Positions 26,057-52,550 of a stretch of 64,000 nucleotides of DNA are shown here, piece by piece; positions within the stretch are counted from its first letter, which is position 1; every line of letters starts with the position of its first letter. The notes below the pieces were generated by a model. It had not been told where the DNA came from and did not search any database. It saw only the letters and a list, made by a program, of their open reading frames with translations. The stretch is from Marsupella aquatica. Taxonomy: Eukaryota; Plantae; Marchantiophyta. A program made the position numbers and the translations under genes. The stretch lies in NCBI GenBank assembly GCA_973895155.1, contig OZ316898.1, forward strand, positions 13,856,330-13,920,329. The letters run 5' to 3'.

Positions 26057-26146
<90 letters not shown>
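26057..26146 (+). repeat. (GA)45 microsatellite in the Copia 5' leader
   Basis: Perfect dinucleotide run. Confidence 0.97.
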
Positions 26147-32727: not shown

Positions 32728-32876
32728 AGAGCTCGCATATGTTTTTCATCTTCATTTCTCGCAATTACTTTGAGGTTTGTTCAGTATTGAGTAGTTGTTT
32801 TCATAGAATACTGTAATCTGAATTTTCTCTGTTGGATACGAATACGTACTCCTATAGAACCCTTGTTTGATTCTCT

Positions 32877-35800
32877 ATGGTGTCTTCAAGTGATGAGTCA
32901 ATTTACAGTTCAGATGCATCTTCGCCAGATGTTGTTCGAAAATATATTCCATCTCGTTTGATGAATGAATTACCAGCCTCACAGAGAGAAGTGCCAGAGA
33001 TTTCATTTTCCTCAAAATCTGAGAAATCAGAGTCTGATTCAGAGTCTTGTAGGAGTGTTGTGGGTGCTCCGATTTCATACTATGTCTCTCCAAGTAAACG
33101 ACGTCTACTTGTAAAGAAGCCTAATGTAGTTCCTACGACAGAGACACTTGGTTCACCACGAACCCCGACAGATCTTCAAAGGCGAAGGCCCCGGTTTTTA
33201 ATGCCAAGAACAACGTTACCATGTAGGCCCGCCCGAAGATCTCCGTTGGTTTTTCCAATGTCTTGTTCTCCGGGAGTGAAGATATCTGTGTCCAGTGTTC
33301 AATCACAGTTTGAGCGAATGAGGAGTCCAAATGTGCCAGAATTGCAGGGAGGGGCAGCCTCGGAGCCAAATTACTCGAATGTTGAGAAACGGTGAACACG
33401 AATTACCTATTTCATCTCCTTCAGTACCAAATTCCTTGGGTCAAATACGAAGTGGGATCCATGGATCCCACTTAGTATTCCCTCGTGTTATTTTGCAGAA
33501 TCCTGTGCCCGAGTCATCGGTCTTACGGACTTCCAACCCGAGTTCCGATGGTGGAATACGAAATGGGATACGCGGATCCCAGTTCGTATTGCGCAACGGA
33601 AAATTACCAAGTCATGACGCAGAACAGCAAGTGGGAAGTTTTCACTTCGAAGTCCCGAAGGACGAATACGAGTTGGGATCCATGGATCCCAATCGGTATT
33701 CCCATCAGTTATTTCATAGAGTGGTAAAACTAACAACATGGGACTTTGAAGCCCTTTGGCGAGGATGCAGTGTGAGGTTTTTGGATCTTCCATTGGACGG
33801 GAAGTGCAGAACGAAAGAGGGAAGAGATCTAGTGTCCAAAAAATTCCTCAGAGATTATTGCGAAGTGAGCTGCCGAAGAGAGGGCCCGAAAATTCAAGGG
33901 TACATGCTAAATTGAAACTTGTCCAAAGATTATTCAATGGTCAAGATGAGCCCTCAAGTCAAGAAGAATCACCTAGGCTGGGATTACAGTCTCAGAGATA
34001 AGTGGGCGGTACTTTGACTGAAGATGTGAATATCATTAGAAGATTTCAAACTAGAAATCTCCGAACACCTATTTCATTTTTAGAAGACTCTGAAGAGAGA
34101 TCAGAGGAGGCTGCAAATGATAGAGAGACTGCTGTAATCTCAAATGTTGTTGAAGAGATCCCGGGAGGTGAGATTGTTCATGAAACAGTTACAGAAAATG
34201 TGGAGAGTGGAAACAACTCTACAGAAAATCTTTTTGTTTTAAATTCTAATTCACTAGAAAATAGTGGGGAGGTAAGTACTCCCGACACTATTCAGGATAG
34301 AGTAGCTAGAGGTGACAAGACCCAGCAAGAAAATCAGAGATCAGATGATTAGAAAAGATAGATTTACCATTGCAAATCTAAAAAAATGCAAAATTAAAGA
34401 TATTTTTAAGTATCCCTGTTGTGACAAGTTTTGCTTGAGGTCTCTGGGTCTAGAGGAATGCTCAAAACAACGCAAGTATTATTTTGGTCTTAAACACTTG
34501 CAAAAAAATATTTTGCTACGAGGTTGTATCATGAACAACTGTAGTACTTCTCGTGGATATAGTGTAAATGGACAACCTATATGTAGAGGAGGATTCAAGA
34601 AACTATATTCTTTAGGTAATAATAGATTGGCAACAATCCATGCAAACATGTTTACAAGGATTGAACAAGATACCTTTTGTAAGGAAGACTCACCTTCATT
34701 TCTAAACTTGGTGGAATGGTTGAAAGATTTTTTCCAAAAAAATATGGATAGTCTTCCCCATAAAGAGATTCATCACTTGCTAGACAATTGGACAAAGCAA
34801 GAGATACATGGAATCTTTGAAGCTGAAACAATGTTGCAAGAAGAACAACAAGTTACATATTCTTATTTTTTGCGTGTTTGGAAAAAAAAGTTTCCAAATG
34901 TACGAATTCCTAAAAGGAGTCGATTTTCTACTTGTGGTCCTTGTACTGAATTCAAGGCTCTTCGGGACAAAGCAACAACTGAAGATGATAAAAGTAAGTT
35001 CCACTAACTATAACCTTCAACTTTAATTTGATGACATGTAATTCAATATTTGTCAAAGTTTATCCTTAGTTATTGATTTTTAATTCATTGCTATTGTATC
35101 ATTTCAGGAAAGTATATCAATGCCCTTATGGAGCATCGAAAAGTACAATCATTGGAAAGGATGAAGTTAGCCAAGCATCGTAAAAAATGCTATGATGAGC
35201 CCAACAAGTATTTGGGTATTTGTATAGATGGTATGGATCAAAAGAAAACAAAGCTACCACATTTTATTCGTTGTCCAAAGAACATGGATGAAAAGTATTT
35301 CATTCCAATACATGTTGTAGGTTGTCTCATCTTCAACAGGAACCTTGTAGCAAAAGTATTTTTGACATATCCCAATATCCATAATGATGCAAACTTGACC
35401 ATACATGTTATTCAAAATGTATTGAATATATGGGATGGGACATTACCAAGAGTGTTATATCTTCAATTAGATAATACCACTCGGGAAAACAAGAATAAAT
35501 TCTTGATGGCTTATCTTCACATGTTAGTAGATTTGAAGATTTTTGACAAGATTAAAGTGGGTTTCTTGTTGGTCGGTCATACACATGACCAGATAGATCA
35601 GATGTTTAGTAAATTTTCGTCTAGGTTAAACAAGCACAAAGCATTTCGCTTGGAGACTCTTGAGGATATTATTCGACGAGCATATTCACCTGAAGCTTTG
35701 ATCATATTTGTGGATGAAGTAGCCAATTTTTGAAAATTTGTCAATGAAAACGACCAGCCAAATGAGAAGGGAGTCTCAGGTAGAGTCTTGAGAGATCTCA

Positions 35801-36710
35801 ATCTCATAACTTTTCAAAGGCAATTCAGATTCAAACGAGTCATGGAGGATGGAAACGAAGAGACAACATTTCACGGGAAACATCTTTCCTGGACGACCCA
35901 GGATTGGGGAGATGCAGTGACGTTCGTCAATTACATTCCAACTTCAAGAATGTGGGTTGCTGCACAAATGTCACTGAAGTCAGCAAAAGGTGTTGAGAGG
36001 GATGATGTCCATGATTCTTCCAATACAGATGGTGCATTAACTACTCTGGTGAAATATGAAAAAGCTATCCAGGAAGGTTTCAATTACTTTGACAATGAAG
36101 ATAAACTTTGGTGGATGAGTTTTTTTGAGAAACAAAAAGATATTATCAAAAACCACCTAGAGGAAGGTGAGTGGTTATTTGAGTGGGTTTGGCCGCAACA
36201 AAATCAAGGTGCACAACTACTTCCAAGGGTGAGAAATGAACTTGTTGAAGAAGGTGTTGATCCAACTTTGTTTGACAAAGTTGCTGGACCACAGAGAATT
36301 ATGTACTCCGGACCTCGACGAAAGCAAGCTGAATTTGGAGATTTCAGAGATATGGAAGTTAACAATAAGTGGTCCATGATATGTGTAGCGGCACACAAGG
36401 ATCCAGAAGGCAAGTTATTTTGGATGGCAAAGGTGTCAAAGATTTTGACAAGAACTGCAGACATTCCTGAGAGAATCAAAATCACATGGTACACAACTGA
36501 GGCAAGTGCTGAGTCTGCTGTTGATGGGAAATATTTCCAGAGAAAGATAATATATCTAATCGACTTCTCCAAGATGAACTAGTTCTATCATCAACAGCGG
36601 TGTATGCATACAACTTTGCACTTTTAAGTACTAATCAAATAGCAGCAAAAACTAAAAAAATTATAGAGTCTGCTATATTAGAGAGAGGTTCTGCACACTC
36701 AGAGGATTGA
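32877..36710 (+). pseudogene. Sola-like DDD transposase, spliced and disrupted
   Basis: Cys-rich N-part (CCDKFC, FSTCGPC); catalytic-type motifs IDGMDQ, LQLDNTTRENKN and GHTHDQIDQMFS; in-frame intron 34994-35107; probable stop at 36708-36710; 5' exon structure uncertain. Confidence 0.85.
33444..33702. repeat. Palindrome cluster 2 (3 copies, 110-bp spacing)
   Basis: GAATACGA..TGGGAT(A/C)C-N3-GGATCCCA...GTATT at about 33444, 33554 and 33664. Confidence 0.88.
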
Positions 36711-38933
36711 GATTGATGTCCTTAAACAGATACATGCATCAATTTTAGAATTTGATCTCGAATGAATTTTCTAAGGTTACATGCTCTTTTACAATTGCAC
36801 CATTTTTCAGTAAATAAAGACTGTGCATCAAGGCATTGTGTAATATGCCATTGAATTCTGATTTCGTCCATATTTTGAAGAATAAATAGACCACAATCTG
36901 AATTGTTTGGTTGTTGAGGTACCTGAGAAAGAATCTTAAAGTTAGTCCAAAGTGTTTAATAATTGAACTAAATAAAAGTTGAAATAACTTTTCAAATCCT
37001 TACCATTGGATTGTATATCTCCACAACTCCCATTGGAACTTTTCCAAAAAATAATTCCCATTCCATTGTAAAATATCTGCAAATTATTATTCAAAGTTAT
37101 TAGTCCAAAGTGTTTATATTTATGTACCACATAAATAAATTCAAATTGAAAAAATGTAATAGAATATATACGTACCTGCTCAGTATTGATCCAATTACAT
37201 GGGTTGAGTGTAGACCGGCGAGAGAGTCTAGATGATACATTTTGATCGAAGATTCAATCCGATCCAAACATATTACAACCAGACTCCAGTGCATGCTCAT
37301 GTGAATTGGCATGAGAATGACCTCAATTTGGGAAAATGGTGGCTTGTAATAATTCCGCATCTTTTGAATTGATTCCAACAGGGTCTCAGCTGGTTCTGTT
37401 TCAATCCTTGAAACAAGCCAAGGGTAAAAAAAAGAGGATAATGTGTTTACTGAGGGAGCCAGATCTCCATGTTCCTCGGTTATTAATTCCATTATTTCAT
37501 CACCCAAATATTGACCGGGTTCAAGTTGGCTCAATGTTTTATTGTCCAAAAGAAATCCACTAGAAGGATTGTGTGAGAATCTATGAAGAACATGTTTCAA
37601 TACAAAATCCTCCTTTGGTTCCTGCAAAGACATTACTTTGTGAAATAAGAACATAGTCCAATCATAATCTTCCTCAATATTTCACAAGTTTGGATCAATA
37701 GATACAACATGAGAGAACTAATCAAACTTAAGTCTACACCTCAAGGAATGAGCCAAGATCAAGTGCCGGAGCTTCATGTTCCACTTCATCCTCTTCATCC
37801 TCATCATTGTCGTTCTCCTCCGCAGTTGTAATAATGCAAGTTCCAGTGGTGAGGGTGCTCATAGTACCACCAATAGGTGGTTGAACCTCAAGCTCATGGG
37901 TCCTGTACGTACCCTCCTCGGTTGCTTCATCATTCAAGTCCCACAATTCATCAAGCGTGACAAGTCAGGTCTGGATACAATCCACCTGGCTTGCACTGAG
38001 CTCCACGGCTGTCACCGGACGTTTTCCTAACAAGGCAGCGCATGAGGTCGAACCACTCCCGCACATAAATCAGCAACCCAATCCCCTGCTTCACTAAAAT
38101 GTTGAACGAACCAATCTGCTAAAGCTATCGGTTTCTGGTAAGGGTTCACTATTTCTCCCAATGGTGTTACACATTTCTTTGTAACACAAGGGGCTTTTAT
38201 GATGTTTACCCTTTTCTCATCATGTTCAAAATTGTACATGTCTCTGGTCCTAATACCACTCTCGTGATAATATCCGATTGACTAGTTTTCAAAAGCCCAA
38301 GCCAATCAATTCTCGGAAGGATGAGCATGTACATTTGGCTTCTCCCAAATTCCAGCCTCTACACCTGCGTTACAAGTTTTTCCAAGAGCATTCATCACAG
38401 ACCAAGTTTGCTGCAAAGAGTGAATCACAACAAACCTCCACATCTTTGAACTTGTCACCTTGGCAAAACAATTCACCATATCCACAATATCACTCTCTGA
38501 AAATGGGACCTCATCATTTTCAGAGCCAGGCGCATTGAATCCATAAGGAATGTCTGCAATTGCAAGTGTGTAATTCCTTTTCTCTACAAACTTATCCAGT
38601 GCCCTGACATCTCCACAATGCAATGTATATCTGATAAAATTTCCGTCAGCATTTTTCCATCGATGGTCACTCGACTCTACTTCAACCGTTTCAATCCGAC
38701 AACGACGGTTGTAGTTCTCAATCGCTTCTTGAACATAATTCTTAAACCCCGGGGGAATAACACTCGAAGTCAGCTCCTCCGTAGGCTTCTCAACCGCATC
38801 GGCACCAATTGCATCCTTGTTCTTCTTCTTTGAAAAAGCTTTCAACTGCAAACGCAAACTTGTTAAAAGAATCTGGAGGAAAGACAATGGGGAGATAACC
38901 ATTTAGGAATTCATACAATCAAATCTGGATGAC

Positions 38934-39332
38934 GAATGCGACATGGGATACTCCGTATCCTAGTTCGTATTCAACCAAGCAAAAACCACAGTCAAACATC
39001 ACCACCGTCAAATAACCACAAGTGAATCCGAGATGGGATACCCCGTATCCCACTTCGCATTTGACCAAGCAAAAACCACATTGAAACATCTCAAACGTCA
39101 AATAACCACATTGAATACGAGATGGGATACCGCGTATCCCACTTCGAATTCAACCAAGCAAAAACCACATTGAGACATCACAAACTTCAAATAACCACAA
39201 GTGAATACGAGATGGGATACCGCGTATCCCACTTGGCATTCAACCAAGAAAAAACCGCATTGAAACATCACCAACATCAAATAAGCACAAGTGAATCTGA
39301 GATGGGATACCCCGTATCCCACTTCGCATTCC
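38934..39332. repeat. Palindrome array 3: five ~90-bp units in intron 38846-39411
   Basis: GAATNCGAGATGGGATAC-N3-GTATCCCACTTCGNATTC starting at about 38934, 39024, 39113, 39203 and 39293. Confidence 0.95.
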
Positions 39333-40680
39333 AACAAGAAATCCACGAAGAAAACCTCCAAACATGGCGAAACAAATAGAAAAGTCCAATCAGTGGAAGG
39401 GGAGAACATACCACATCGGACAATTTCCCACTCCATCTTTCAAGCTCGACAGATTCTGTTTCTTTCGGAAACATTTGTTTGCAAGTCGCCCAGTCTTTCT
39501 GCCCTGACAACTAAACAAAAAGCTTGCTGATTTTCACAAGTTTCTTGTAACTCTCGGCTTCTTTTGCCATCTGCTCCAAAGAGATCATCCGGTCCTTCAC
39601 TTGGAGAAGAAGGGACTCCAAAAATTGGTCATGTTCAATTCCCTGGATTGCTCTCCAAGGTGTCAAGGTAAGGCCCCCTGCAAGCTTATTCAAAGCTTTT
39701 GGAATCGACTGCGCTTTTCCCTTTCCTTTCTTGAGTTTCTTGATTGGTGACTTCTGCTTATTCTGCCCTTTGATCTCCAACTTGTTCCACATCTCAAAGA
39801 TCTGGTCTTGGAGTTCCCAGACCTTACCCGACCTAAACGCAATTTGGAAGAGAGGCTCATGCTTCTTCAGGCTTGTGGCGTCCCCCGGAAAAAACCCGTC
39901 GAGGCAAACCTCCATCGCACACGCTTCTCTAGTCTCCTTGGTTTTTGTCATTCCTCTAGCAATAAAAATCTTATGCATTGTTTGGATTTGATCAATGTTG
40001 TTCATTTTTTTCCTGTACTCCTGATCAATATTATGTTGGATGCTAAGTTTGTGAATGTCCTCCCTTGTGAGACCAGCATACACCCAAGCTTGGAGTTCAT
40101 TGAAGATCTCTCTCCCATAATCCTGATACAATTCTCTCTTGGCCCGAGCACCGTGATTACCTCCAATCACTCGATATCTCCAGCTTGCTGCCTTTTCTGG
40201 GTCCCAGTCTGTCACTGTCGGGCAGTCTTCCGGGATCACAAACAAGACAAATGGCGTCGTGAAATTTGTCGGATTCATTTTCATCAAAGTCTTGATGTTC
40301 TCCACATGCAACCGATCGACTGTTCGAACCAACGTTGAGTTCTCGTCGTCAATATCGTCAACAAGAAGCAGGTTAGTTGTTTTTAGAATAACTGTTGTCT
40401 TCTAAACTCGCTTAGTCTCCATCAACCGAGACACTTCTTCACGAACCACAAGTGTCTCTTCCCGCTGCAAAGCTGTGGTGATATCTGTTGAATCGTTTTT
40501 CTTTTCTTTAACAGCTCCTCTAGATGATAAAGAAAGCCCACCTGACAAAGTTGAAGGAATCTGAGGTGTCTGTGAAATTGGTGGGACCAAAGATGAGACA
40601 ACACTTCCTAGTGCAGAAGGCGCGCGCTTCTAGATGTCACGTCGATCCAATTTCTTCTTGACAATAGCTTCTCCTGACAC

Positions 40681-43600
40681 TGTGGTGCGTCCCATGGCTC
40701 CCTAAACCCCAGAAACCCCCCTTCACAAGCCGATTCCCGCGGGTTTCGCGCTTGGCGAGGCCGTTTCCACGGCTTAGTGGCATGGGACACTGCTAACCTC
40801 CTACTACTACTATTAACATTTTACACACATATACTGGACAGATCCTTCATCGGGTCATGAGATACGTAGCCGGCCTAATCTAGGCCTTCCCTTGTCTTCC
40901 CCTCCGTCTTGTTAGGTATATTTGGATTCCGCCGCCGGAATGATCCCCAATAGGCTTGGTTAAGCCGCTAAGACCTCTCTCAGCTCAACACATCCAACTC
41001 TCACTCCCTTGCTTACTTTCCTTCCTCTATTAGTTGATGTGGGCACTCTTCACACAAGTTAATGCGACACACAAATAGCAAAATGACTCCTTCTGACTGA
41101 GTCATACCATGCACTTGCCATACAAACAGTACATCTCATACACAAGCTCTGCGAACTAAGTCGTGAGGCCAACTCTATTCAGCTCTTAGGCATGAGGAAA
41201 CATGAATATACACAAGGGTCACTGTATGACTAACCGAGAGCTTCTCTTACTACTTGATCCCAGCCCGGCTGGTGCAACTAAAAACTTGCTAAAGAAGAGG
41301 CCCTGAGCTCCCCGCTGCCCAGGTACTTATCCTGGTAGTGGATCCGCCTAATTCCTTGTAGCGTAAGCTTAATCTACCTAACTGAATCTACCTATGTACA
41401 GCGAGGCAGGAGTACAAGTGTTGCTCTTACCAGTGGAACCGCAATCCCACTAAGCTAAGTGTCAGGGACGCCTCCTGGTCCTGATCCTAATCCTAAACTT
41501 AGAGATCTGAGCCCGCCCTGCCCACTCACGCCTCCTCCCTCCATGTCCGCCCTCCTTGAAAGGAGCGGCCCTCCACCACCGTCATGGCAGCGGTGTCTGT
41601 TCCTCAGTGGACACCCCCAATGCTTCCACCTCAGCCACTGCTGTAGGTTCGTTCTCTGACAGATTACCTGCCCTTGACTGAGTCAACTCTCCATCGGCCT
41701 GACTGGGTCCACCCCCGGCAACGGCATCGGCTTCAACATCAGCCTCGGCTATGGCCTCAGCCACGGCTATGGCCTCAGCCACGGCTACGGCCTCAGCCAT
41801 GGCTACGGCCTCCCCTGCACACTCAAGTGGCGGATTGGGTACCTCGGCTTCATTACCGAGTATCCTGGCCTCGGCTTTGTCATCCCCTTCTTCTAGGGTA
41901 GTTGGATCCTCTGCCGTAACCCTACTTGAGGTCGGTGCTGGGTTTACCTCCTTGGTTACCACGGCCTGTGGAGCCGTATTACTCCCTGACCCTGAAGGTT
42001 TCCGCTTCTTCTTCTTTTCTGGTTCGGCAGCTGGCCCCTTCCCCTTCCCACTTACTTCCGGCACTAGTGCAAATGGGGCGGCTTGTCCTTCGGCCAGTAC
42101 CACTCCTGATAACTTAGTGGCCTCAATTTGAGTTGGCCCTGATGAAGCCAAGCACTTAAATACTACAGCTTGTTTCTTCAACCGCTCCGTTTAGTTGTCA
42201 GCTCATCGTTGTAAGTTCTCTAGCTTCCGCGTGCTTTCCTCCAACTCTTCCTGCACTTCGTCCAGGTCCTTGCACGCCTCCTCCAGCTCCTTTTGGGCTT
42301 CCTCCAATTCCTGTTTAAATGCAGTTCTCTCCTCCCGGGTCGCTCTTAACTCCTTGTCGAGCTCTGCAATGATGACACACTCCATCTGGTTCATCTTGGC
42401 GTAAGTCTGATCGAGCATATTGTCCTTCTCACGCAGGTCGGCTTTGAAGCTGGCCGTCAGGGACGCAAACTCCTATTGCAGCGCAATAATCCCTTGATAG
42501 GATTTCCCTAACTCGGCCTCCTTCTTCTCAAGGGCTCTGCGGATAACCTTGAGCTCCCCCTTCAATGCCCTTTCCCTTCTTTGGGTCTCCGCCCTGGCCC
42601 AGTCGTTGGCTGTTATGTGGGCCTCCTCTGTATCCCTCAGCTCTCGCTTCCACTTCTCCCGCTCCTTGATCGCATCGGCCAACTCTTCTTGGGTTCGAGT
42701 CAATTTATTCTTGATAATCCGATTATCAGATTGTGCGGTATCCAATTGGCCCTGCATGATATTTAGCTCATGCCGCTTAATCCGTAGCTCATCTTGGGCT
42801 TTCTTGGCCGCCCTCAGGTCTTTGATTTCGGCTTCCCTTGCCCTGAGCCGACGGATGACCTCGTCCTTCTTGCTTCTTTCCAAAGCCACCGCTTCTTCTA
42901 ATTGACGCTTCTCCAACATCTCCCTCTGAAAAAAGGGTCCATGCTCCAACTCTTCCCCAAAGATGCTGAGCACCAGCTCTCCACACATTTCCCCGTACTC
43001 CATGGCTCTATTTTTAGCATAGGTGGAGGAAGTAGAAGTCATCGGCATCATCCACCGTGGCCTGTGCTCCCAAGCCGCCTTGCGGATCTCTTCTATTATG
43101 GCTGGAGGGATGCTTCGCTTTTCTGCAAGCCGCCTGATGTCCTCTGGCCATTCTCCTCCTCGTAAATCCTTTTCCCTAGCCAGGGCTGCCTCCTTTTCCT
43201 CCCTGATTCGCTCCTGAAATTCCTGCGCCGTTTGTTTTATGCCGTCAAAGCTCAGGGGAGCGACATCTGGTGGGGGAGACTCGGGGCTGCTCTACTGGCT
43301 CGGGTCTCCTCGAACTACTCTTGGGAGCGTGGGGATGAACCGGCCACAGGTCCTTACTCCTGGAACATGATGATCCGACCCGTAGCCGGAGTCATCATTG
43401 CTGTAGTCCTCTACCGCCTCCTCCTCGACTTGGACTACCGGCTTCTCCCGCTGTTCTCCTGGTTTTGTCCTGAACACGGCTTCACCTCTCACCGGTCTTG
43501 GTTCCTCCTCCGGCTTCCGTGTTGATCTCTTGTTCTCCTTGTCGTGGCCGGGAGCTACGGCCTGCTTCTCCTCGGCTTCGGGACTTGAGGCTCTGACATA

Positions 43601-45452
43601 CATCTGGACTCCCGGCTCGTGTTCCGGCCTCCTTCTCTCCTTGACCCCAGTAAAGGGGTTTTCCCTTGTAAGACGGCTTAGGCCCACCTCTGGAGCAGTG
43701 TCCTGCATTGGTGCTGTTGCCGTTGCCGTTGCCATTCTCTTTTCCTTCTCCAGCAATTTCAGCAGATTCTGCATGCCTGGTTGCTGCATCGGCAAGTCCT
43801 TCGTCCTTGGCCTAAACACCTGCTCGATTGTAGGATTGTCGGGCGGGTTGGGTTTCTCCGTTGCCGGCCTCTGCTCCGGGACCTCCTCCGGTGCTCTAGC
43901 CGATAGGGGAAGTACTGGGGCAAAGATTTGACTTCTGGCATACCGGCACAACAGCGGCATGTGATAGCCAAGCCGGGACACGCTTCCCACGCCGATCATC
44001 TGTTGTTCCTCCTTCAAGATCTTCTTCAGTTGGTTGAGGAGGTACCCATTGTAATCCCGACTTGGGTCTGGCCTTTTTGCCAGGTAGACCTGAGCCTTGC
44101 CGATCTCTGCCCTCGGCAAGTTACAGTGCATGGTTACCCGCAAGAAATCGATCATCTCTCCGATGTGCAGGTTGGTGCAGGTGTTCCGGAAGAAGCCATT
44201 TTTTGTTGATGGTCCTGGGAACGACCGAAACTCCTTGTCAGGTAAGGTCTTCCTGGTATCAACCTTGGTCTTATTACCCATCGACAAGCCAAACACTTCA
44301 GCAATCACCCGGGGAGTGAGATAGAAATCCTTCCCATACACCCTTGTGGAATTGGTCTCGGACTCCCATGATCCCACGAATTCTAACAAGTCTGAGTCCG
44401 GCACCTCCGGGTTCAGCCATGGTAATCTTACGAAGGCTTCCAAGCCGGATCCGGCCATGAAGCCTTGGTACTTCTTGGTCTGCATAGCTATAAAGCATGC
44501 ATCCTCCCCCCGTGCAAAGTGTAATTGCACTTCCTCCGGTAGGGTCGCTGCCCAGCCTTTCCAGGTGTCATCGTTTGTTGGAATGGCATTGATGGGGTCG
44601 ACCTCCTCCTCCTCGGCTTCTCTCTGCCTCCTGCTCTGCTGTTCTGCTGGCTTCTTTGGTGCCGCCGACCTCGTTCTTTTTGCCGGGGTGGCCTCTTCAT
44701 TGTTGTTGCCCTTCCTCTTCATCTCGGCTGCCGTGGATGTCTCTCCTAGCACGGTTGCCTTTGTCCACCCCTCCGTGCTACCCTTCAACTCCCAGTGTAT
44801 GTCGTTGCAGCGTTTGATGGCTTCGTGGATGCCGATGACTCTGTCATCGCAAAACAGCAGGTCGTCTAGCTCGTTGCTAGTAGGCGTCCACATGAATTCA
44901 GCCTTGATGAGTTCTCCTCCTAAGAAGGCAGCTTTCTGCAGCTCCCACAATCGAGCGAGCTCCTACCGTTCTCGAGCTGCTCTCTCCGATTCTTCATCCT
45001 CGTAAGTCCCAATGTACTCAGTTGCCCGTTTGAACAGGCATCCCCAAAAATGTGCCGCTTGATTGACGTTGCTCATACCCTTCTCGAGTTGATAGTCGGT
45101 ATTTGTTCCCACCCTGAGCGCTTGCCTAAGCAGTTGACAGTAGTTGGCCGCCCGTAGTCGCCTGCCCAGTTCGTGCTTGCAAATGAGCCACTACTCCTTG
45201 CAAGCGGTCCTTACCCCTCTCCTCCTAAGGTTCTCCCTCCCGTTGGTTACCCCTAGCCGCCGGCACTTAGCGTGCCCTAACCCTAATCATATTCTCTCCC
45301 CTGGCGTCCTTACTTCCGGCCTCGGCTCGGGTTCCATAGTCACCCTTAATTGTTTATATTTTCCTTATTTATGTAACTATACTAAGGTGTTTCTAGGGTA
45401 CACTTCCCTTTTCCCCTTAAACTAGCCCAGTGATTCCTGGCTAGGCATCACA
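40681..45452 (-). mobile_element. Solo-LTR-like unit A (4.8 kb) carrying a gene
   Basis: TGTGGTG...CATCACA ends; TSD GACAC (40676-40680 and 45453-45457); removal restores VAVSGEAIVKK in the interrupted frame; shares the ATTCC(A/G)GCGG(C/T)GGAA...ATACCTA motif with units B and C. Confidence 0.88.
41582..45077 (-). pseudogene. Retroelement accessory-type protein with long coiled coil inside unit A
   Basis: ORFs 43292-44950, 42473-43051, 42203-42418 and 41582-42181; motif LLEFVGSW...VYGKDFYLTPRVIAEVFGL; no gag or pol motifs. Confidence 0.72.
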
Positions 45453-45643
45453 GACACCGCTACTTTAGAACCTTCCCCAGAGAGTTGATCTGCAAGCTTC
45501 CTCTTTGCCGGTTCCTTAAAAGAAACTGTGGCAAATTTCTCCTTTGTCGAGGGTGTTCCAGACATCTCCCCTGACTTTGAAGCCGGATCGGTAGGCTTCA
45601 TCACTTTCAACTTTAAAGGCCGCTCTTTGACGCCAAAGTTGGC

Positions 45644-48600
45644 TGTGACACGGGTACGTGTCACTTAACGGAACCCAGGTCGTAGATTAGGCCATATACG
45701 GGCATTAGGACCGTAGCCATAGCGTAGAATAGCACGTATAGCCGTCGGTTGCCATTATGATTAGATTAGGAGTAGGTTAAGATGACCAAATAATTACGAG
45801 TTCAGGAAAGGGATTATTACGCACGACCGAGGTACGGTGGCGGCAACGGAGTAAAAATCAGTTAGAAAAATCACGCTTGGACCGAGGTGCCGACTTTAGC
45901 TCATTATCAATGACCAAAACGGCCTGGCCTTCTCACGCTCGGGCTCATCCTGGCACCTCCATAAGAGAGGAGCCGATGGCGCTACGGGCCATTTGCTCAT
46001 GTCTACCTTTTTGGAATTCACGGACGTTGCCATCCACTCGCCTTTCTGATCGAATCGAGTCAACCCTTACAAGGAGATTATCGAGGGAGAGGAGCGGAAT
46101 GTGGCGAGATTTAGTCACGATGATCGAGGCCTCCACGAGGAAAAAGACCAGTCGGGTGGGAACGTGGACTCAACAAACCGGACTACGAGGTTAGTATGAC
46201 CCTCACAGCCTTGGGATTTTGGACCTTGTTTGGCGAGGTAGGTGCTAAGTTCTCCGAGACTTACTGGTACTCTTGTCCCGAGAAAGCCGCTTACGAACGA
46301 AGATACGCGAAGCTGGTAACCAAGGTGGCACTAGTTAATTGCGAAAGGACAGCCATCACCAGGGATTCCAGCTACAACGAGCTGCAAGACTACATCACCG
46401 AACTATATCTCAGCGAGGAAGGGCTTAGATCGGTAGCAGAGGCGATTCTTGAGGTCCCAACGAAGTTCTTTAAGTTGAAGGGCAGCCAGCGGCTTACTCA
46501 AGCGGAGTTTGACAAGATTCCAGGGTACCTAGACCAGCAGATCGCAGCCGAAAAGTGCCAAGAAGACATCAGCAAACAACGGGAAGCGGCGCGTAATCTT
46601 ATGTTCCTCGGGGAAAGCTCCAACGCCTTCAACTGGGATATGGCTGCCCCGATACCACCAGTGCCTCAGCCGATGACCACCGGCGTACCGCCGAACCGGT
46701 CCCAAGTCCGTCCAGTAATCAACACAAAGTGTTTTTCGGGTTCCGAGCGAGCTAGTCCGCAACTCGAACAGCGTCCTTGTAAGCAGCCAAGGACTACGAC
46801 GGCCCCCAAATCAACAACGTGGACCAACGCCGCGCTTGCACCTGCCCCGATAAACCCCCCGACCAACCAGACCCGACGGCCCCCGGATAACCCGAAGTCC
46901 AACTTATTATAGGTAATCCGCGTCCCCGAAGTAGTCTGGATCGCGATCAAGAAACTCGAACATGCGGACTATCTAAAGGAGCATCAGTTGGAGCAGTTCG
47001 CTCACTTGCTTTGGAGGCCGTGCACCGCCGGGCCGAAGGAGATTTGTGAGTTCATCTCCAATTTCGACACTGACGCGTCGACCACCAAGGTTTCGGGGCA
47101 GGCCTTATCACTCACGGAGCATCGGTTAACGCAAATCTTCTACCTACCAACCGGGCCAGTGCCGGTGGAAATCCAAATTCGGGATAAGGAGTATACGCCG
47201 TGGCACTTCAAACCTGAGGGTAAGATGAACAACAAATACAAGCAGGGGGCATGCACCAACTTAACCTGTATGGAGCGGCTTAACTTCATACGGACTACCC
47301 TACACATGATTGAGCCACGATCCGAGATTTCCCTCTGCACGATCGTGCAGGTGGAACAATACAAACGACAAAACTGGGCCCAATTCTTCTACCGAAGATT
47401 CTCGGGGAGCTGAAGCGGGCTCAGGGTGGTATGGCTATTGGGGGGAAGACTTACTTGGGAAGTCATATCGCCATTATCCTCGCCTGGTACAAGGCACGGC
47501 GGGAGGCCAGAGGAAAGAATATGGCCACCTCAGCCCCGGCTAATGTCACCCCCGCCCCGGAGGAGGCAACCCCGAGCACGTGGACTACCATCCCTCGGGC
47601 AAACCCCGAGCCGGAAGCCCCGACTAATACTCCGCCACCTCCTCCTGTGGAAATTCCGCCGCCCCCTTCCGTTGAGCCTCCACTACCCGCAGTACAACCA
47701 CCCCCAATCCCTCCACCACCTGAAGATATCTTCCCCTCCCCAGCGCTGACTACAGAGGAGATCGTTGCTCCACCCGAGGAGCCACCGGTACCCGAGAGGA
47801 TGGAGGACTACCAAGTAGCCCCGGGGACCATGGCCTACGACCTGGTCCAGAAGTTTAGCCAGACTATGTCTGGGGAGCTGGCAACATACATCGGACAACA
47901 AGTCTCGGCGTACTTTCAACCAGCCTTCTTCATGTTAGAGCACCAACCACGGATCGTAAGCCGCTTGGAAGAAGAACTCATGGCGAAGGGGAATGAGATC
48001 GGGCGCCTCCAGATGCTGGTAGAGCACCTCAAGGAGGAGGCAACTACCCGCCGCGAGGAGTTAGTCCGCACCGTCGAACAGAGGGACGGACTAACCTAGG
48101 AGTTAAGTGGAGCGCAGGCCAAACTCAAGAAGCTGGACGACACCGTGCTTCAATTACGCTTAGAATCTTCGGCTCGAGTTACCAGCCTGACCGACCTCAA
48201 CAAACAATTCCTGCAGGCAGCACAGCAGGTGGCTAGTCTCTCCGCCGAATGAGATAAATTGCTAGCGCAGGACCAGATCCATCGCGACTCCATCGACCAG
48301 CTCAATCTGGAGGTAGCGCTCCAGACCGAGGCCGATGAAGCTGCAAATGAGGCGGAGGAGGCGGTACGGGACAACAAGGCCTTGCAGGACCGCATTACCC
48401 TGCTCGTCCTCCAGCGGGGAAAACCTTGGCCCACCTCTGATCAAGGCGGCTCGAGGTCTCGTCCCGACAAGGGGACCAGCCCTGGTCCAACCACTGCACA
48501 CACGTAAGGGGTGGTTAGCGAAGGGTGGAAGCAGGCGCCGCGCAAGGCAGTTAAGACAACGACATCTTTTGGTTAGGCGTAACGATAGAATGACTGTCAT

Positions 48601-49458
48601 TAGGCGCCGATTAGCGGCAGTAAGAAGAATTAGGGCCGAATCAGTTAGGATCAGCCAACATAGGATGGAGTCCATCAACGGACTAGAGTTTGTCAGTAGG
48701 CTTGGCCGTTGCCATCCTGGTCGGCACCTTGTCATCGACGGTCAACCAGTCAGTGCGGCGCGGCCAGTAGTCAGTAGGCAGTATCCTCCGGCTCTCCTCC
48801 GCCATTGTAGTATTTAGGCTTCCCCTTCCGCTATGGAAGGGGGAGAAGGCTTAGTTATCTCAGCAAAAGAAAGGTGAGGCACGGGGAGTCCCGGCCTGAG
48901 CAGGGTCAGAGCGCACCAAGGAGTGAGAGCCAGAGTCGAGCTTGCTGGGCAAGTGCGCGGCAGGGCCTCGTAGAGACTGGGCATCGACTGCCGTTGGGCC
49001 TGCTGACCCCCTTTGAAGTCGAGTCAACCATGTAAACTGATGCTTCGCTGAGTAAATGTAGTCTTTTCCCCCTAATGTTTCCGCAAGTAACTGGTGTTGT
49101 GTGTATGCTTTGTCTGGGTAAGGCGCCATTTTAAGGGACGTACCGGGTGCGGACTAATGGTAGGGATTGCCACTCATTGTATGTCACAAGGTCCTGTCGT
49201 GTCGATGGCTTGAAAGGCCCCAAGCCGGGAGTTAGTCCGAGTCACTAACTGAGGGAATATTCCAGCGGTGGAAAACAAATATACCTATGACTAGTACAAA
49301 TTACGCAGGTGTTATACCAGTAAGTATATCGACTTAGCCCGACTTAGGGCTAATAGAGGTCACTACACACCTCCTTGCCCAAACCCTCACCCTTACTGGT
49401 GGTCGAGGTCGCACCATGGCACTAAACTGGATTTAAGGCCCAAGTTAGCGGCGCGACA
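45644..49458 (+). mobile_element. Solo-LTR-like unit B (3.8 kb) carrying a gene
   Basis: TGT...ACA ends; TSD TTGGC/TCGGC (one C>T difference); removal restores VVGADFGVKERP; 3' 600 bp homologous to unit C. Confidence 0.85.
46196..48507 (+). pseudogene. Retroelement accessory-type protein (Pro-rich linker, coiled coil) inside unit B
   Basis: Near-continuous frame with in-frame stops and one frameshift; motifs ICEFISNF...VSGQALSLTEHRLTQIFYL and QNWAQFF, similar to the unit A ORF. Confidence 0.72.
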
Positions 49459-50068
49459 TCGGCTCCAACAACGGACCTATACGCTACCTTCGTAAAATCC
49501 TCAACAACCCTCCAAGACTTCAAGACAAATTTCAAACACCAATAAGAAAAGTCCTCAATCTCCGGCACTTCCGAAATTAGCTGGCAGATCGGGTCATCAG
49601 GAAATGTGTTCATCAAGACCCGATCAATTTTCTCGTAGTTGAGGACAACTACAGTGAAGGCATTGTTCGGAAGAATGCAAAGGTACATTGGAATCTTCTT
49701 CAGCTATTTTGTTTTTGAGTCAGTGATATCCGCCTCCTCGGTGTCCATGACTAATCCATAATGGCAATGGTCTTTACCCTTAACGATAACCAACCACACC
49801 GCTGGACCTTCATATGCTCTATGAATATCCATCGCCCGAGCATCCCTGAAGTACCACCTATTCCTCACGAGTTTCTCCTCCGTGTAAAGGTCTTTCTTCC
49901 AAATCTCATCGACGATGGATGTCCGTGCAGACTGGGTCGAACCAGACGACTTTGATTTGTTCGACATGATCCTGAAAAAGATTGACACACTTAGAACCAG
50001 ACCAAACCACTTGGCATCCAACATCAACAATTGCCAAGTCTGACGCAAAGAACGAAAAAGAGGGAGTT

Positions 50069-50448
50069 GAATGCGAAATGGGATACGCGGTATCCCACTT
50101 CGCATCCAACAACAACAAATGTCCAGAGTCTGATGCAATTAACGAAAAAGAGGGACTTGAATGCGAAATGGGATACGCAGTATCCCACTTTGCATCCAAC
50201 CTCAACAATTGCCTCGAGTCTGATGCAAAGCACGAAAAAGAGGAGTTGAATGCGAAATGGGATACGCGGTTTCCCAGTTCGTATTCAAAGTCTAGAAAGA
50301 GCAAGGAGGTTCGGATGGAAGACTAAAAAGAGGGTGTTCAATGCGAGATGGGATACGCGGTATCCCATCTTGTATTCAATATTGAAAAGAAGGCCAAATA
50401 ATAGAGTTGAATACAAATGGGGATACGGCGTATCCCTCTCAGGATTCA
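50069..50448. repeat. Palindrome array 4: five units in the probable 5'-UTR intron of the MTase gene
   Basis: Units at about 50069, 50159, 50248, 50339 and 50409; acceptor TTTTTCAG near 49972; minus-strand TATAAATA near 50618-50625. Confidence 0.93.
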
Positions 50449-51445: not shown

Positions 51446-51621
51446 TCCAAAATAAGAGTGGATACCTGGAGTAATAAATGAGATGGTGAGCTCTTTCTCA
51501 GCAACCTACAAAACAGTGATGGAAAAACTGATTTTATTTCTTTGATCAAAATAAAAATATATTCACAAAATGTTTGACCCAAGAACGTTCACCTAAACAC
51601 TTACACACTAATCAAGAAAAT

Positions 51622-51957: not shown

Positions 51958-52155
51958 AAGAGAAAACTTTGTTTATCAAGGAAAGCTTAAGCTTGAGTGG
52001 GTGTCGGTCACTGAAAGGCAGCAAGAGCTTCAATGCGTACAGTTCAGTTGAACTTTGCCTGCAAAACAATCAGTAATCCATAAGGTTTTTCCCATCATTC
52101 AAATAAACTCTAGGTAAATACCACATGGGCAATCAAAACTGGACATTTGAAGAGT

Positions 52156-52550
52156 GAATCCCAAACGGGATACGCCGTATCCCATTTCACATTCAATGTT
52201 GAGGTTTTGACATTTATGGTCTAAGATGCTTCATTTTCGCAGGTTGGATGCGACATGGGATACCCCGTATCCCACTTCGCATCCAACCTCCTTTTTCAGC
52301 TAAAGAGAAAACAAACTGGACATTTGAAGAGTGAATCCCAAACGGGATACGCCATATCCCATTTCACATTCAACGTTGAGGTTTTGACATTTGGAGTCTA
52401 CGATACTTCATATTCGGAGGTTGGATGCGACATGGGATACCCCGTATCCCACTTCGCATCCAACCTCCTTTTTTAGCTAATGTGAAACGAAAACTTGAAA
52501 TTTGAGGGTTGAATCCCAAACTTGATACGCCGTATCCCATTTGGGATTCG
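52156..52550. repeat. Palindrome array 5: five units forming a ~177-bp higher-order dimer, in a probable 5'-UTR intron
   Basis: Units at about 52156, 52246, 52333, 52423 and 52511; donor near 52579, acceptor near 52059; further single copy at about 52859-52898. Confidence 0.93.

What the first reader, a model, noticed from the sequence alone, without database searches (positions are those of the whole stretch)
36722..49967. Transposon-borne ParB-like / amino-DNA-methyltransferase / SUMO-protease fusion gene
Seen: removing two TSD-flanked inserts and four phase-compatible GT-AG introns gives one ~1260-codon frame. It contains a ParB/Srx-like motif (YRVIGGNH) and a methyltransferase whose catalytic motif IV (ADIPYG) precedes the SAM-binding motif I (DLCAGSGST), i.e. 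beta-class order. A phase-0 intron (37622-37739) joins it to a Ulp1 peptidase retaining its His/Asp/Cys triad. Established: ParB-N plus N6/N4 methylase fusions are typical of phages and prokaryotic mobile elements. Eukaryotic beta-class amino-MTases of bacterial origin are rare (bdelloid N4CMT, Marchantia sperm 4mC enzyme), while Ulp1 domains are known cargo of plant Mutator and CACTA elements. Inference: a plant cut-and-paste transposon has intronised a prokaryote-type MTase and may write 6mA or 4mC and remove SUMO on its own chromatin. I know of no description of this architecture. DIPY does not settle 6mA versus 4mC, and this copy is dead.
Basis: partly seen in the sequence, partly recalled or inferred. 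Interest (0 to 1): 0.96.

Follow-up and report, generated by a model that had tools for sequence, protein, structure and literature searches.

The report
Transposon-borne ParB–adenine-methylase–Ulp1 pseudogene
A decayed copy of a little-known plant DNA transposon carries, besides its transposase, a gene for a phage-style DNA-binding (ParB) plus DNA-methyltransferase protein with a SUMO-protease tail; the ParB–methylase pair recurs next to the same transposase in algae, liverworts and other genomes, and I found no paper describing it.

Summary
The minus strand from 49967 to 36722 encodes four parts in order. First comes an N-terminal region. Second is a ParB/Srx-like domain plus helical DNA-binding part; the AlphaFold model has pLDDT 89 and its top Foldseek matches are Noc, ParB and KorB. 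Third is a beta-class PF01555 amino-methyltransferase with motif order ADIPYG, NPYQKP, DLCAG-SGST. Fourth, after an acidic linker and a 118-nt GT-AG intron, is an intact Ulp1/C48 peptidase.

Four GT-AG introns are confirmed. The "single frame" is not: it has six in-frame stops, a 1-nt frameshift inside motif I and an insertion of about 8.7 kb.

The carrier is neither CACTA nor Mutator. It is a 21.3-kb element (31752-53050) with 35-nt terminal inverted repeats, a 4-bp AGAG flank and 16 palindromic repeats. Its transposase is a DUF7869 protein with an RNase-H-like fold.

The same DUF7869 / ParB-methylase pairing occurs in Riccia (two loci), in a TIR-bounded metagenome contig and in another assembly. 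Relatives also occur in Chara, Adiantum and Ginkgo. The module is therefore an old component of this transposon lineage. Ulp1 is a lineage-specific addition; its junction is conserved in one other copy.

The DxPY motif and the nearest solved enzymes (HpyAVI, CcrM, RsrI, MboIIA) favour N6-adenine methylation. I found no publication describing this.

The parts
31748..31751 (.). AGAG, left copy of the putative 4-bp target-site duplication
   Evidence: The same 4 nt lie at 53051-53054 directly outside the right TIR. The right flank is AG-rich, so this is weak on its own.
31752..31786 (+). Left terminal inverted repeat (AACACAGTGACGGACCAAACGAGAA...)
   Evidence: 35 nt, 91% complementary to 53016-53050. 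The 23-nt core CACRGTGACGGACCAAACGAGAA occurs exactly twice in 64 kb, once at each end in inverted orientation; 0 are expected by chance.
32097..32530 (.). Left subterminal palindromic repeats (GGGATACnnnGTATCCC and the GGGATCCATGGATCCC variant)
32871..36582 (+). Transposase gene. DUF7869 core at 35077-35730. One frame runs 34306-36579, broken by a stop at 35731-33 and by a 72-nt stretch at 35005-35076.
   Evidence: Pfam PF25273 scores 2e-45, 155 bits. tblastn of P0164 gives 1.8e-106 over 34354-36534. The motifs IDGMDQ, LQLDN..ENKN and GHTHDQIDQ are present. The AF2 model of relative P0151 has an RNase-H topology, and its Foldseek matches are IstA, retroviral integrases and Sleeping Beauty.
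36722..36922 (-). Last Ulp1 exon (VPQQPNNSDCG..., catalytic Gln/Cys) plus the stop codon 36722-36724
   Evidence: Pfam C48 scores 7.8e-5. The acceptor is checked.
37004..37076 (-). Middle Ulp1 exon (YFTMEWELFFGKVPMGVVEIYNPM)
   Evidence: GT-AG borders. The same exon is present in L007 and L008.
37176..37621 (-). First Ulp1 exon (catalytic His and Asp); no stops
   Evidence: Pfam C48 scores 1.4e-10, 41.8 bits. It is 61-65% identical to P0271 and P0272. dN/dS is 0.17-0.19 against L007 and L008, but dS is saturated.
37622..37739 (-). Phase-0 GT-AG intron between the acidic linker and Ulp1
   Evidence: GTGTAG...TCTTTGCAG. L008 keeps ...FLE|GT, a stop just after the donor, an intron of about 120 nt and then the Ulp1 exon.
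37740..38845 (-). Intronless exon holding the beta-class amino-methyltransferase (ADIPYG at about 38557-38540, NPYQKP, DLCAG/SGST, VELS) and the acidic linker. It is broken by stops at 38306-08, 38282-84 and 37965-67 and by a missing base at about 38057.
   Evidence: Ginkgo P0022 and P0024 align across it by tblastn. A weak Pfam N6_N4_Mtase hit (0.037) falls on 38030-38281. Intact relatives give strong hits, 7.6e-18.
38846..39411 (-). Phase-0 GT-AG intron containing a 90-bp tandem array (38934-39379) with five palindromic sites
   Evidence: In L001 the ParB ORF and the methylase ORF are separated at the corresponding place by a gap of only about 70 nt.
39412..40662 (-). Exon with the ParB/Srx-like N-domain plus helical DNA-binding part (YRVIGGNH). 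Stops at 40630-32, 40402-04 and 39511-13.
   Evidence: phmmer finds 152 relatives. The AF2 model has pLDDT 89. Foldseek matches are Noc, ParB, KorB, PadC and sulfiredoxin at E 1e-6, probability 1.0, and phage ParB proteins including a ParB-methylase.
40699..49420 (.). GC-rich insertion of about 8.7 kb, unclassified; borders approximate
   Evidence: GC is 50-55% against about 40% in the flanks. Homology to relatives stops at about 40662 and resumes at about 49503. ORFs have no Pfam hit. An internal 35-nt inverted repeat lies at 40913/49253.
49425..49967 (-). N-terminal exon starting at ATG 49967; one stop at 49704-06
   Evidence: It is homologous to the ORF that precedes the ParB ORF on contig L002 (2e-9).
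50007..50437 (.). 90-bp tandem array with five palindromic sites, 40 bp upstream of the ATG
52135..52888 (.). Right subterminal array with six palindromic sites
53016..53050 (-). Right terminal inverted repeat
53051..53054 (.). AGAG, right copy of the putative 4-bp target-site duplication

Best explanation
Shown:
- Window 31752-53050 is one decayed, once-autonomous cut-and-paste DNA transposon. Its transposase is a DUF7869 protein with an RNase-H-like fold and an acidic D..D..(E/D) triad.
- The element carries a convergent accessory gene (49967 to 36722, minus strand).
- The product of that gene has, in order, an N-terminal region, a ParB/Srx-like domain with a helical DNA-binding part, a beta-class (PF01555) amino-DNA-methyltransferase, an acidic linker and an intron-bearing Ulp1/C48 cysteine peptidase.
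- The ParB-methylase pair has the same domain order as phage ParB-methylase fusions. It is a conserved companion of DUF7869 transposases in several distant genomes.

Inferred:
- In intact copies the methylase writes N6-methyladenine. The grounds are the Asp in DxPY and the nearest solved relatives, which are all N6A enzymes.
- The ParB/HTH part targets the enzyme to the element's own arrays of palindromic repeats. This would work either as a KorB/ParB-like regulator of the element's genes or to mark element DNA.
- The Ulp1 tail, added in this plant lineage, removes SUMO from chromatin or silencing factors near the element.

This particular copy cannot make the protein.
For: - Domains.
- Element borders: the TIR core occurs exactly twice in the window, with a 4-bp flank. 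All 16 palindromic sites fall inside the TIRs, against 0.01 expected.
- Transposase.
- Conserved linkage: the DUF7869 and ParB-methylase genes are neighbours in L004 and L006 (Riccia), in L005 (a metagenome contig where TIRs at 20-47 and 8844-8871 enclose both genes) and in L010.
- Multi-copy family in Chara, Riccia, Adiantum and Ginkgo.
- Catalytic motifs D-x-P-Y-G-F, PYQKP and GSGT are conserved from Chara to ferns.
- The profile of the family hits HpyAVI at 2.4e-10, CcrM at 3.5e-9, then RsrI and MboIIA. These rank ahead of the N4C enzymes: bdelloid N4CMT at 2.9e-4 and PvuII at 0.45.
- The methylase part of P0024 matches 667 phage records. One is a Streptococcus phage protein with ParB_N plus N6_N4_Mtase, lying close upstream of the terminase small-subunit gene.
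- The linker-Ulp1 junction is conserved in L008. The QPPxGG tail motif that follows the methylase in Ginkgo and Adiantum also precedes Ulp1 in L008.
- The Ulp1 exon has dN/dS of about 0.18.
Against: - There are no transcripts, so the methylase-Ulp1 splice is a model. A stop codon lies 4 nt after the donor, so a methylase product without Ulp1 is equally possible.
- No relative outside this lineage has Ulp1.
- Gene orientation in the window is convergent, whereas in L004, L005, L006 and L010 it is head-to-head.
- The Foldseek support for the transposase fold is weak (best E 6e-4, TM 0.2-0.45).
- The 4-bp TSD sits in an AG-rich flank, and no empty site was available for comparison.
- The Pfam ParB_N model does not hit the window protein.
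- Base specificity, DNA versus RNA substrate, and any binding to the palindromes are untested.
- Some copies have substitutions in motif IV (DIPH in Ginkgo, DFPC in two Chara proteins), so not all are likely to be active.
Confidence: 0.72

Rival explanations
1. There are two adjacent genes rather than a fusion. The ParB-methylase gene ends at the TAG at 37734-36, and an independent Ulp1 gene, a common plant transposon passenger, starts downstream.
For: A stop codon follows directly after the proposed donor. Relatives in Ginkgo, Adiantum, Riccia, Chara, L001, L005 and L010 end after the acidic tail and have no Ulp1. An ATG at 37654 could start a separate ORF.
Against: The donor (FLE|GT), the intron length and the Ulp1 exon right after it are conserved in L008 at about 61% identity, whereas the intron sequence is not. 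The phases are compatible. There is no room for a promoter in 118 nt.
Confidence: 0.25
2. One reading: a plant CACTA or Mutator element recently captured and intronised a bacterial methylase.
For: Transposase_21, DUF4218 and DUF4216 ORFs lie at 27-31 kb on the same strand. Ulp1 is known cargo of such elements (established knowledge). The TIR contains CAC..GTG.
Against: The CACTA genes lie outside the TIR pair at 31752/53050. The element has its own DUF7869 transposase. Linkage of ParB-methylase to DUF7869 is seen in five loci from distant genomes. There is no close prokaryotic donor: the best phage identity is 23-29%. The methylase exon has no intron in this copy. [quoted passage not shown]
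Confidence: 0.04
3. The methylase writes N4-methylcytosine, acts on RNA or protein, or is a catalytically dead DNA-binding module, and so is not a 6mA DNA writer.
For: PF01555 contains both N6A and N4C enzymes. Two eukaryotic members with known activity are 4mC writers. Iyer et al. (PMC4738411) note repeated shifts of acquired amino-methylases to RNA. Motif IV is degenerate in some copies.
Against: The known eukaryotic 4mC enzymes have S in SPPY, whereas this family keeps D. The best solved matches are all N6A DNA enzymes. Fusion to a ParB/HTH DNA-binding module argues for a DNA substrate.
Confidence: 0.25
4. The ParB-methylase gene is a domesticated host gene that merely lies near transposon debris.
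For: The Riccia locus L006 has ordinary host genes nearby (aminotransferase, ribosomal L22e). The amphioxus and abalone ParB-like relatives look like single annotated genes.
Against: In the window and in L005 the gene lies inside a TIR pair together with the transposase. L006 also has a DUF7869 remnant upstream. The family is multi-copy and frequently broken within each genome.
Confidence: 0.08

Closest known systems
Phage and plasmid ParB-N + N6_N4 (beta-class) DNA methyltransferase fusions (the 'ParB-Tls locus' methylases of Iyer et al., PMC4738411), e.g. Streptococcus phage Javan93 gp16
   Same: They share the domain order: ParB N-domain first, then a PF01555 methylase with motif IV before motif I. 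The methylase part of the intact relative P0024 matches gp16 by tblastn, and gp16 scores ParB_N 4.2e-5 and N6_N4_Mtase 1.3e-27. The ParB-like model matches phage ParB proteins and a mycobacteriophage 'DNA methylase'.
   Different: Identity is only about 23-29%. This gene is in a eukaryote, has spliceosomal introns and sits inside a DDE transposon instead of close to a terminase gene. It has long extra N-terminal and linker regions and, in this lineage, a Ulp1 tail. Motif IV is DIPY rather than DPPY.
Eukaryotic beta-class amino-methylases of bacterial origin: bdelloid N4CMT (PMC8885841) and Marchantia MpDN4MT1a/b (bioRxiv 10.1101/2021.02.12.428880)
   Same: They belong to the same Pfam family and show the same permuted motif order. 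They occur in eukaryotes and are fused or adapted to chromatin contexts.
   Different: Those are single host genes with an SPPY/TSPPY motif and proven 4mC activity, and they have no ParB domain. This family has DxPY, is multi-copy and is transposon-linked. The profile matches N4CMT only at 2.9e-4, against 2.4e-10 for N6A enzymes.
Transposons that carry DNA-modification enzymes: DNMT-bearing retrotransposons of charophytes and dinoflagellates (PMC5890265), and TET/JBP-bearing KDZ, EnSpm, hAT and Helitron elements of fungi (PMC12730594)
   Same: In each case a mobile element encodes an enzyme that writes or erases a DNA base modification alongside its transposition machinery. This suggests manipulation of host silencing.
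   Different: The enzyme class differs (an amino-methylase rather than a C5-methylase or a dioxygenase). The transposon class differs (DUF7869). This case also adds a ParB-type DNA-binding module.
Ulp1/C48 domains in plant transposons (KI-MULEs/Kaonashi, CACTA) - from established knowledge
   Same: A C48 peptidase with an intact His/Asp/Cys triad is encoded inside a plant DNA transposon.
   Different: Here it is spliced onto a methylase rather than a transposase or a stand-alone ORF, and the carrier is neither Mutator nor CACTA.
Sola superfamily of DNA transposons (Bao et al. 2009; recalled from memory as DDD transposase with 4-bp TSD; PMC5751038 states that Sola had no Pfam model in 2017)
   Same: The apparent TSD is 4 bp. 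The invariant acidic residues are D44, D127 and D169 in DUF7869. The distribution is patchy across algae, plants and marine invertebrates.
   Different: No comparison with Repbase Sola, Novosib, Dada or other sequences was possible here. This is a lead only.

Membership tests
N6_N4_Mtase (PF01555, beta-class amino-methyltransferase) | Catalytic motif IV (D/S)PPY-like lies N-terminal to the SAM-binding motif I FxGxG (permuted order) | tested here: met
   ADIPYG lies upstream of DLCAG/SGST on one contiguous exon. The same order is seen in all intact relatives.
N6_N4_Mtase (PF01555, beta-class amino-methyltransferase) | Score above the Pfam gathering threshold (26.7 bits) | tested here: inconclusive
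   The window fragments score only 14.4 bits (E 0.037), because the domain is split by stops and each piece was searched apart. Homologous intact relatives pass: P0022 65.7 bits, P0024 39.9 bits, the L010 ORF 49.1 bits.
N6_N4_Mtase (PF01555, beta-class amino-methyltransferase) | Conserved (H/N)PxQKP motif just before motif I | tested here: met
   NPYQKP in the window and PYQKP in relatives. It aligns to HPTQKS of HpyAVI in the profile alignment.
N6-adenine (as opposed to N4-cytosine) specificity | Asp rather than Ser at the first position of motif IV, and closest characterised relatives being N6A enzymes | tested here: met
   DxPY is present throughout the family. PDB ranking puts HpyAVI, CcrM, RsrI and MboIIA ahead of N4CMT and PvuII. 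This is indicative only; activity was not testable.
ParB/Srx superfamily (ParB N-domain) | ParB/Srx fold followed by a helical HTH DNA-binding domain | tested here: met
   The AF2 model has pLDDT 89. Foldseek matches to Noc, ParB, KorB, PadC and sulfiredoxin have probability 1.0 and E down to 1e-6, with TM (target) up to 0.63.
ParB/Srx superfamily (ParB N-domain) | Sequence match to Pfam ParB_N, or to solved ParB sequences | tested here: not met
   No Pfam hit at E<=1. The profile A1 has no PDB sequence hit at E<=10. The family is a divergent branch.
ParB/Srx superfamily (ParB N-domain) | CTP-binding GERRxRA / ENLQR boxes | not tested
   The family keeps GG(N/G)H...A and HN.D (G80, G81, H83 and N124 are nearly invariant). 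This resembles the Srx/nuclease-type GxHR motif more than GERR. No residue-level superposition was done.
Peptidase_C48 (Ulp1/SENP) | Pfam score above the gathering threshold, and a His-Asp-(Gln)-Cys catalytic set | tested here: met
   41.8 and 23.0 bits against a cutoff of 20.7. The residues are H in HMSMHW, D in HLDS, and Q and C in QQPNNSDCG.
CACTA/EnSpm (CMC) transposon | [quoted passage not shown] | tested here: not met
   Transposase_21 lies outside the TIRs. The termini are AACAC(A/G)GTGACGG with a 4-bp flank. The DUF7869 consensus has about 38-41 residues and no Cys/His motif between D127 and E166/D169.
Mutator-like element | MULE/MuDR transposase, long TIRs, 9-11-bp TSD | tested here: not met
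   There is no such Pfam hit in the element. The TIR is 35 nt and the flank repeat 4 bp.
DUF7869-type DDE transposon | PF25273 domain with an RNase-H-like fold and a conserved acidic triad; TIRs enclosing the gene | tested here: met
   155 bits against a cutoff of 26. D44, D127 and D169 are invariant or nearly so. The fold matches are IstA, integrases and Sleeping Beauty, though weak. TIRs are present in the window and in L005.
Marchantia MpDN4MT1 / bdelloid N4CMT orthologue | SPPY/TSPPY catalytic motif; single host gene | tested here: not met
   The window and the liverwort Riccia copy in L004 both have DIPY. The family is multi-copy and transposon-linked.

The most novel reading that the evidence does not exclude
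A whole lineage of eukaryotic DDE transposons (DUF7869 type) has kept a phage-derived ParB-methylase module as a core accessory gene. The lineage spans charophytes, liverworts, ferns, gymnosperms and unidentified other organisms. In this reading, the ParB/HTH part recognises family-specific palindrome arrays on the element: 16 sites in the window, 9 in L010, 6 in L005 and 5 in L004. The methylase then deposits 6mA on the element's own DNA. This would act as a self-mark that regulates transposition or counteracts host 5mC/H3K9 silencing. In one plant lineage it is reinforced by a fused SUMO protease. If so, this would be a transposon-encoded 6mA writer in land plants.
Probability: 0.3. Interest if true: 0.88.

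Novelty: new variant of a known kind. Interest (0 to 1): 0.72.

Why it matters
Writers of adenine methylation in land-plant DNA are unknown or disputed. Iyer et al. (PMC4738411) recorded few N6A-methylases in land plants. The only eukaryotic beta-class enzymes with shown activity are 4mC writers in rotifers and Marchantia sperm.

A conserved, multi-copy, transposon-encoded ParB-methylase gives concrete candidate enzymes that can be expressed and assayed. Intact natural copies exist in Chara and Ginkgo and on the metagenome contigs. They also give a concrete set of loci, the elements themselves, at which to look for 6mA.

The finding adds a third enzyme class, after DNMTs and TET/JBP, to the short list of DNA-modification enzymes carried by eukaryotic transposons. 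It assigns a likely role to Pfam DUF7869 as the transposase of a widespread element. It also suggests that ParB-type site-specific DNA binding has been reused in eukaryotic mobile DNA.

Tried and rejected
- Pfam on the ParB piece, the N-terminal pieces and the ORFs of the large insert gave nothing.
- PDB sequence searches with the ParB profile and the DUF7869 profile found no relatives. Only fold comparison worked.
- The search for homologous proteins with the methylase part of P0024 returned no hit, because of the length window and the word index.
No bacterial donor search or phylogeny could therefore be done.
- Ulp1 was looked for by blastp/tblastn in the first 150 hits to the ParB piece and in the relatives' loci fetched by then (L001-L006), and was not found. 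L010 was fetched later and shows no Peptidase_C48 among its called genes. Only two short Logan contigs hold close Ulp1 exons. Looking up the L008 linker ORF gave the same contig again.
- DNA for the Adiantum locus and for the closest ParB copy, P0001, could not be fetched.
- The TSD of the 8.7-kb insert is unproven. Only a 7-mer at chance level was found, with no TIR or LTR at its ends.
- The region 50.4-52.1 kb and the left 2.5 kb of the element have no similarity to any other fetched locus or protein.
- I considered a CMC/Chapaev affiliation because of the CAC..GTG termini and the 3-4-bp TSD (PMC4079192). I rejected it because the CMC Cys/His motifs are absent.
- I did not identify the source species.

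Full report
**1. What is in the sequence.**

- 39514-40401 carries YRVIGGNHGARAK.
- 38309-38902 carries YTLAIADIPYGF.
- 38030-38281 carries NPYQKPIALADWFVQHFSEAGDWVADLCAG.
- 37737-37964 is an acidic linker.
- 37103-37681 and 36725-36955 are the two halves of a Ulp1 peptidase.

Pfam confirms Peptidase_C48 above threshold, at 41.8 and 23.0 bits against a cutoff of 20.7. It gives only a sub-threshold N6_N4_Mtase hit (E 0.037) on the third piece and nothing for the ParB-like piece.

Reading the DNA shows four introns with GT...polypyrimidine-CAG borders and compatible phases:
- 39411-38846, between the ParB and methylase exons;
- 37739-37622, between the linker and Ulp1;
- 37175-37077 and 37003-36923, both inside Ulp1.

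The parts do not form one open frame. Stops lie at 49704-06, 40630-32, 40402-04, 39511-13, 38306-08, 38282-84 and 37965-67. One base is missing at about 38057, so DLCAG and SGSTSCAALLGKRPVTAVELS are in different frames. Relatives align by tblastn straight through the stops in the methylase region (P0022, P0024). These are therefore decay, not introns, and the methylase exon (38845-37740) is intronless here. The three Ulp1 exons have no stop.

I never joined the spliced model for a search or a fold.

**2. The ParB-like claim.**

phmmer with 39514-40401 against 1.84 billion representatives found 152 proteins. An alignment of 40 of them (A1) gave an AlphaFold model with mean pLDDT 89.

Foldseek against the PDB puts Noc, chromosomal ParB (CTP/CDP complexes), KorB, PadC and sulfiredoxin on top. 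Probability is 1.0, E reaches 1e-6, and the alignments cover both the N-domain and the following helical domain. Against viral models the top hits are phage ParB/Spo0J proteins, including a mycobacteriophage 'DNA methylase'.

Sequence-only searches (Pfam, PDB profile) see nothing. This is a divergent ParB/Srx branch, and fold comparison is what supports it.

**3. The methylase claim.**

The longer relatives carry Pfam N6_N4_Mtase C-terminal to the ParB-like part: P0022 at 7.6e-18, P0024 at 6e-10, plus P0028 and P0006. They align with the window pieces.

The family motifs are I-x-D-x-P-Y-G-F (IV), W-x-K-P-N, P-Y-Q-K-P and G-S-G-T (I), in the permuted beta-class order.

A profile of the family (A3) hits solved N6-adenine enzymes first: HpyAVI 'DpnA' at 2.4e-10, CcrM at 3.5e-9, then RsrI and MboIIA. 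N4-cytosine enzymes rank much lower: bdelloid N4CMT at 2.9e-4 and PvuII at 0.45.

The Marchantia sperm enzyme has TSPPY and N4CMT has SPPY. This family keeps Asp, including the liverwort copy in L004, which reads ADIPYGF exactly as the window does. N6-adenine is therefore the better guess, but it remains an inference.

The methylase part of P0024 matches 667 phage and 158 plasmid records at 23-29% identity. One of them, Streptococcus phage Javan93 gp16, has ParB_N plus N6_N4_Mtase and lies close upstream of the terminase small-subunit gene. This is the same architecture as the window gene, and no close prokaryotic donor was found.

**4. The carrier element.**

- Repeats. A palindromic unit (GGGATACnnnGTATCCC within 90-bp repeats) occurs 16 times in the window, against 0.01 expected. 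The sites lie at 32101, 38945-39304, 50080-50420 and 52167-52870.
- Termini. Just outside these lies a 35-nt inverted repeat, 31752-31786 versus 53016-53050. Its 23-nt core occurs exactly twice in 64 kb. AGAG flanks both ends.
- Transposase. Inside the repeats, on the plus strand, 34306-36579 is a nearly intact gene with Pfam DUF7869 at 155 bits.
- DUF7869 family. These proteins are multi-copy in Chara and in oysters, mussels, corals, amphioxus and echinoderms. They have invariant or nearly invariant acidic residues D44, D127 and E166/D169. They fold into the beta1-3/alpha/beta4/alpha/beta5/alpha RNase-H pattern. The Foldseek matches are weak but consistent: IstA, retroviral integrases, Sleeping Beauty and TnsB.
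- Excluded carriers. The CACTA-type genes at 27-31 kb are outside the TIRs. The CMC hallmark motifs (PMC12730594, PMC4079192) are absent from DUF7869.

The element is therefore a DUF7869-type DDE/D transposon. From memory, a 4-bp TSD with a DDD triad fits the Sola superfamily, but I could not test that. No paper in the library mentions DUF7869.

**5. Linkage elsewhere.**

The ParB-methylase gene sits next to a DUF7869 gene in the following loci:
- Riccia sorocarpa L004;
- Riccia L006, as an unannotated remnant;
- the metagenome contig L005, where TIRs at 20-47 and 8844-8871 enclose both genes;
- L010 from assembly GCA_046766215.1.

Family members also occur in Chara braunii, Adiantum nelumboides and Ginkgo biloba. 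ParB-like relatives without a detectable methylase occur in amphioxus and abalone.

Similarity ranks of transposase and ParB parts across loci are roughly concordant, with L010 most distant in both. Each locus has its own repeated palindrome.

The pairing is therefore an old property of this transposon lineage, not a recent plant capture. In the other loci the two genes are head-to-head; in the window they are convergent, with 139 bp between their stop codons.

**6. The Ulp1 tail.**

No relative or fetched locus other than two short Logan contigs has Ulp1.

One of those contigs, L008, begins with the tail GLEVHPPIGG...EAPPLEFGDFLE. This is followed by GT, an immediate stop, an intron of about 120 nt and then the Ulp1 exon. 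That mirrors the window's ...HELEVQPPIGG...EAPALDLGSFLE|GT arrangement.

The QPPxGG tail is the same one that follows the methylase in Ginkgo and Adiantum. Both later Ulp1 exons are also conserved in L007 and L008.

dN/dS of the first Ulp1 exon is about 0.18, though dS is saturated.

The fusion is thus a reasonable, lineage-specific gene model. It still needs transcript evidence, and the two-gene rival keeps about a quarter of the probability.

**7. Inserts.**

The 90-bp array at 38934-39379 lies inside the 566-nt intron. In L001 the ParB ORF and the methylase ORF are separated at the corresponding place by a gap of only about 70 nt.

A GC-rich block of about 8.7 kb (roughly 40699-49420) separates the N-terminal exon from the ParB exon. 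The N-terminal exon is homologous to the ORF upstream of the ParB ORF on L002. The block's ORFs have no Pfam match, and I could not verify a TSD.

**8. Mechanism.**

Shown:
- the domain set;
- the transposon context;
- conservation of the catalytic motifs;
- conservation of the pairing with the transposase.

Inferred:
- Intact proteins methylate adenine in DNA.
- The ParB/HTH part binds the element's palindrome arrays, as ParB binds parS and KorB binds its operators. This would target or regulate the element.
- Ulp1 removes SUMO from nearby chromatin or silencing proteins.

Parallels exist in DNMT-bearing retrotransposons (PMC5890265) and TET/JBP-bearing fungal transposons (PMC12730594).

**9. 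Novelty and verdict.**

Database entries for the Chara and Riccia proteins carry only automatic names. Iyer et al. (PMC4738411) list other ParB-linked methylase clades, in haptophytes, chlorophytes and chytrids, and note few N6A-methylases in land plants. Rodriguez et al. (PMC8885841) state that N4CMT has no eukaryotic homologues. Five further literature searches found no description of this architecture or of DUF7869 elements.

I rate this a new variant of a known kind: transposon-borne DNA-modification enzymes, and phage-type ParB-methylases. The carrier was misidentified, the open frame was overstated, the function is untested and this copy is dead.

Noticed in passing
window 27047-31055 (-): CACTA/EnSpm-type genes (Transposase_21, DUF4218, DUF4216) lie immediately outside the left TIR of the DUF7869 element. 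The element may have inserted into or beside a CACTA copy.
   Followed up: partly
window 14142-15749 (-), 21048-25081 (-), 26057-26146: There are a Ty3-type gag ORF, a copia-type gag/integrase/RT series and a perfect (GA)45 microsatellite. The whole window is transposon-rich, and no host gene was recognised.
   Followed up: partly
window 40699-49420: The GC-rich insertion holds two divergently oriented paralogous ORFs: 43292-44950 (-) and 46988-47413 (+), 28% identical at 1e-13. It also holds coiled-coil-like ORFs. None has a Pfam match, and a 35-nt inverted repeat lies at 40913/49253. It is an unclassified element.
   Followed up: partly
L010 1731-7607; L005 2262-5899; L004 3509-11652: Each related element carries its own repeated palindrome: 9x GTCAAAATATTTTGAC in L010, 6x a GACCGATAGCGATATACG-type repeat in L005, and 5x GTATGCGCGCATAC in L004. 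This parallels the 16 GGGATACnnnGTATCCC sites of the window element. They may be ParB-like or transposase binding sites.
   Followed up: partly
window 50440-52134 (-): A gene-like stretch inside the element (ORF 50894-51292 and possible further exons) has no similarity to any fetched locus or protein. It could be a third element gene or a further insertion.
   Followed up: partly
P0085, P0137 (Branchiostoma), P0061 (Haliotis); P0193, P0184, P0188: ParB-like relatives exist in amphioxus and abalone without a detectable methylase; the abalone protein has a Tudor-like C-terminus. Some animal DUF7869 proteins carry OTU peptidase or zf-MYND domains.
   Followed up: partly
P0006 (Chara braunii GBG86584.1, 1825 aa): This protein has two ParB-like plus methylase modules in tandem (ParB-like at about 154 and 1130; methylase at 381-595 and 1475-1713). 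This is either a tandem duplication or a merged gene model.
   Followed up: no
window 36725-37621 versus 37740-49967: The three Ulp1 exons contain no stop or frameshift, while the rest of the gene has seven stops and one frameshift. Given the lengths, this is not statistically remarkable.
   Followed up: partly
L004 about 12350-12560: The Riccia copy has an intron inside the methylase domain, after IWYK. The window copy and the Logan and metagenome copies are intronless there. Intron gain in the liverwort lineage is the likely explanation.
   Followed up: no
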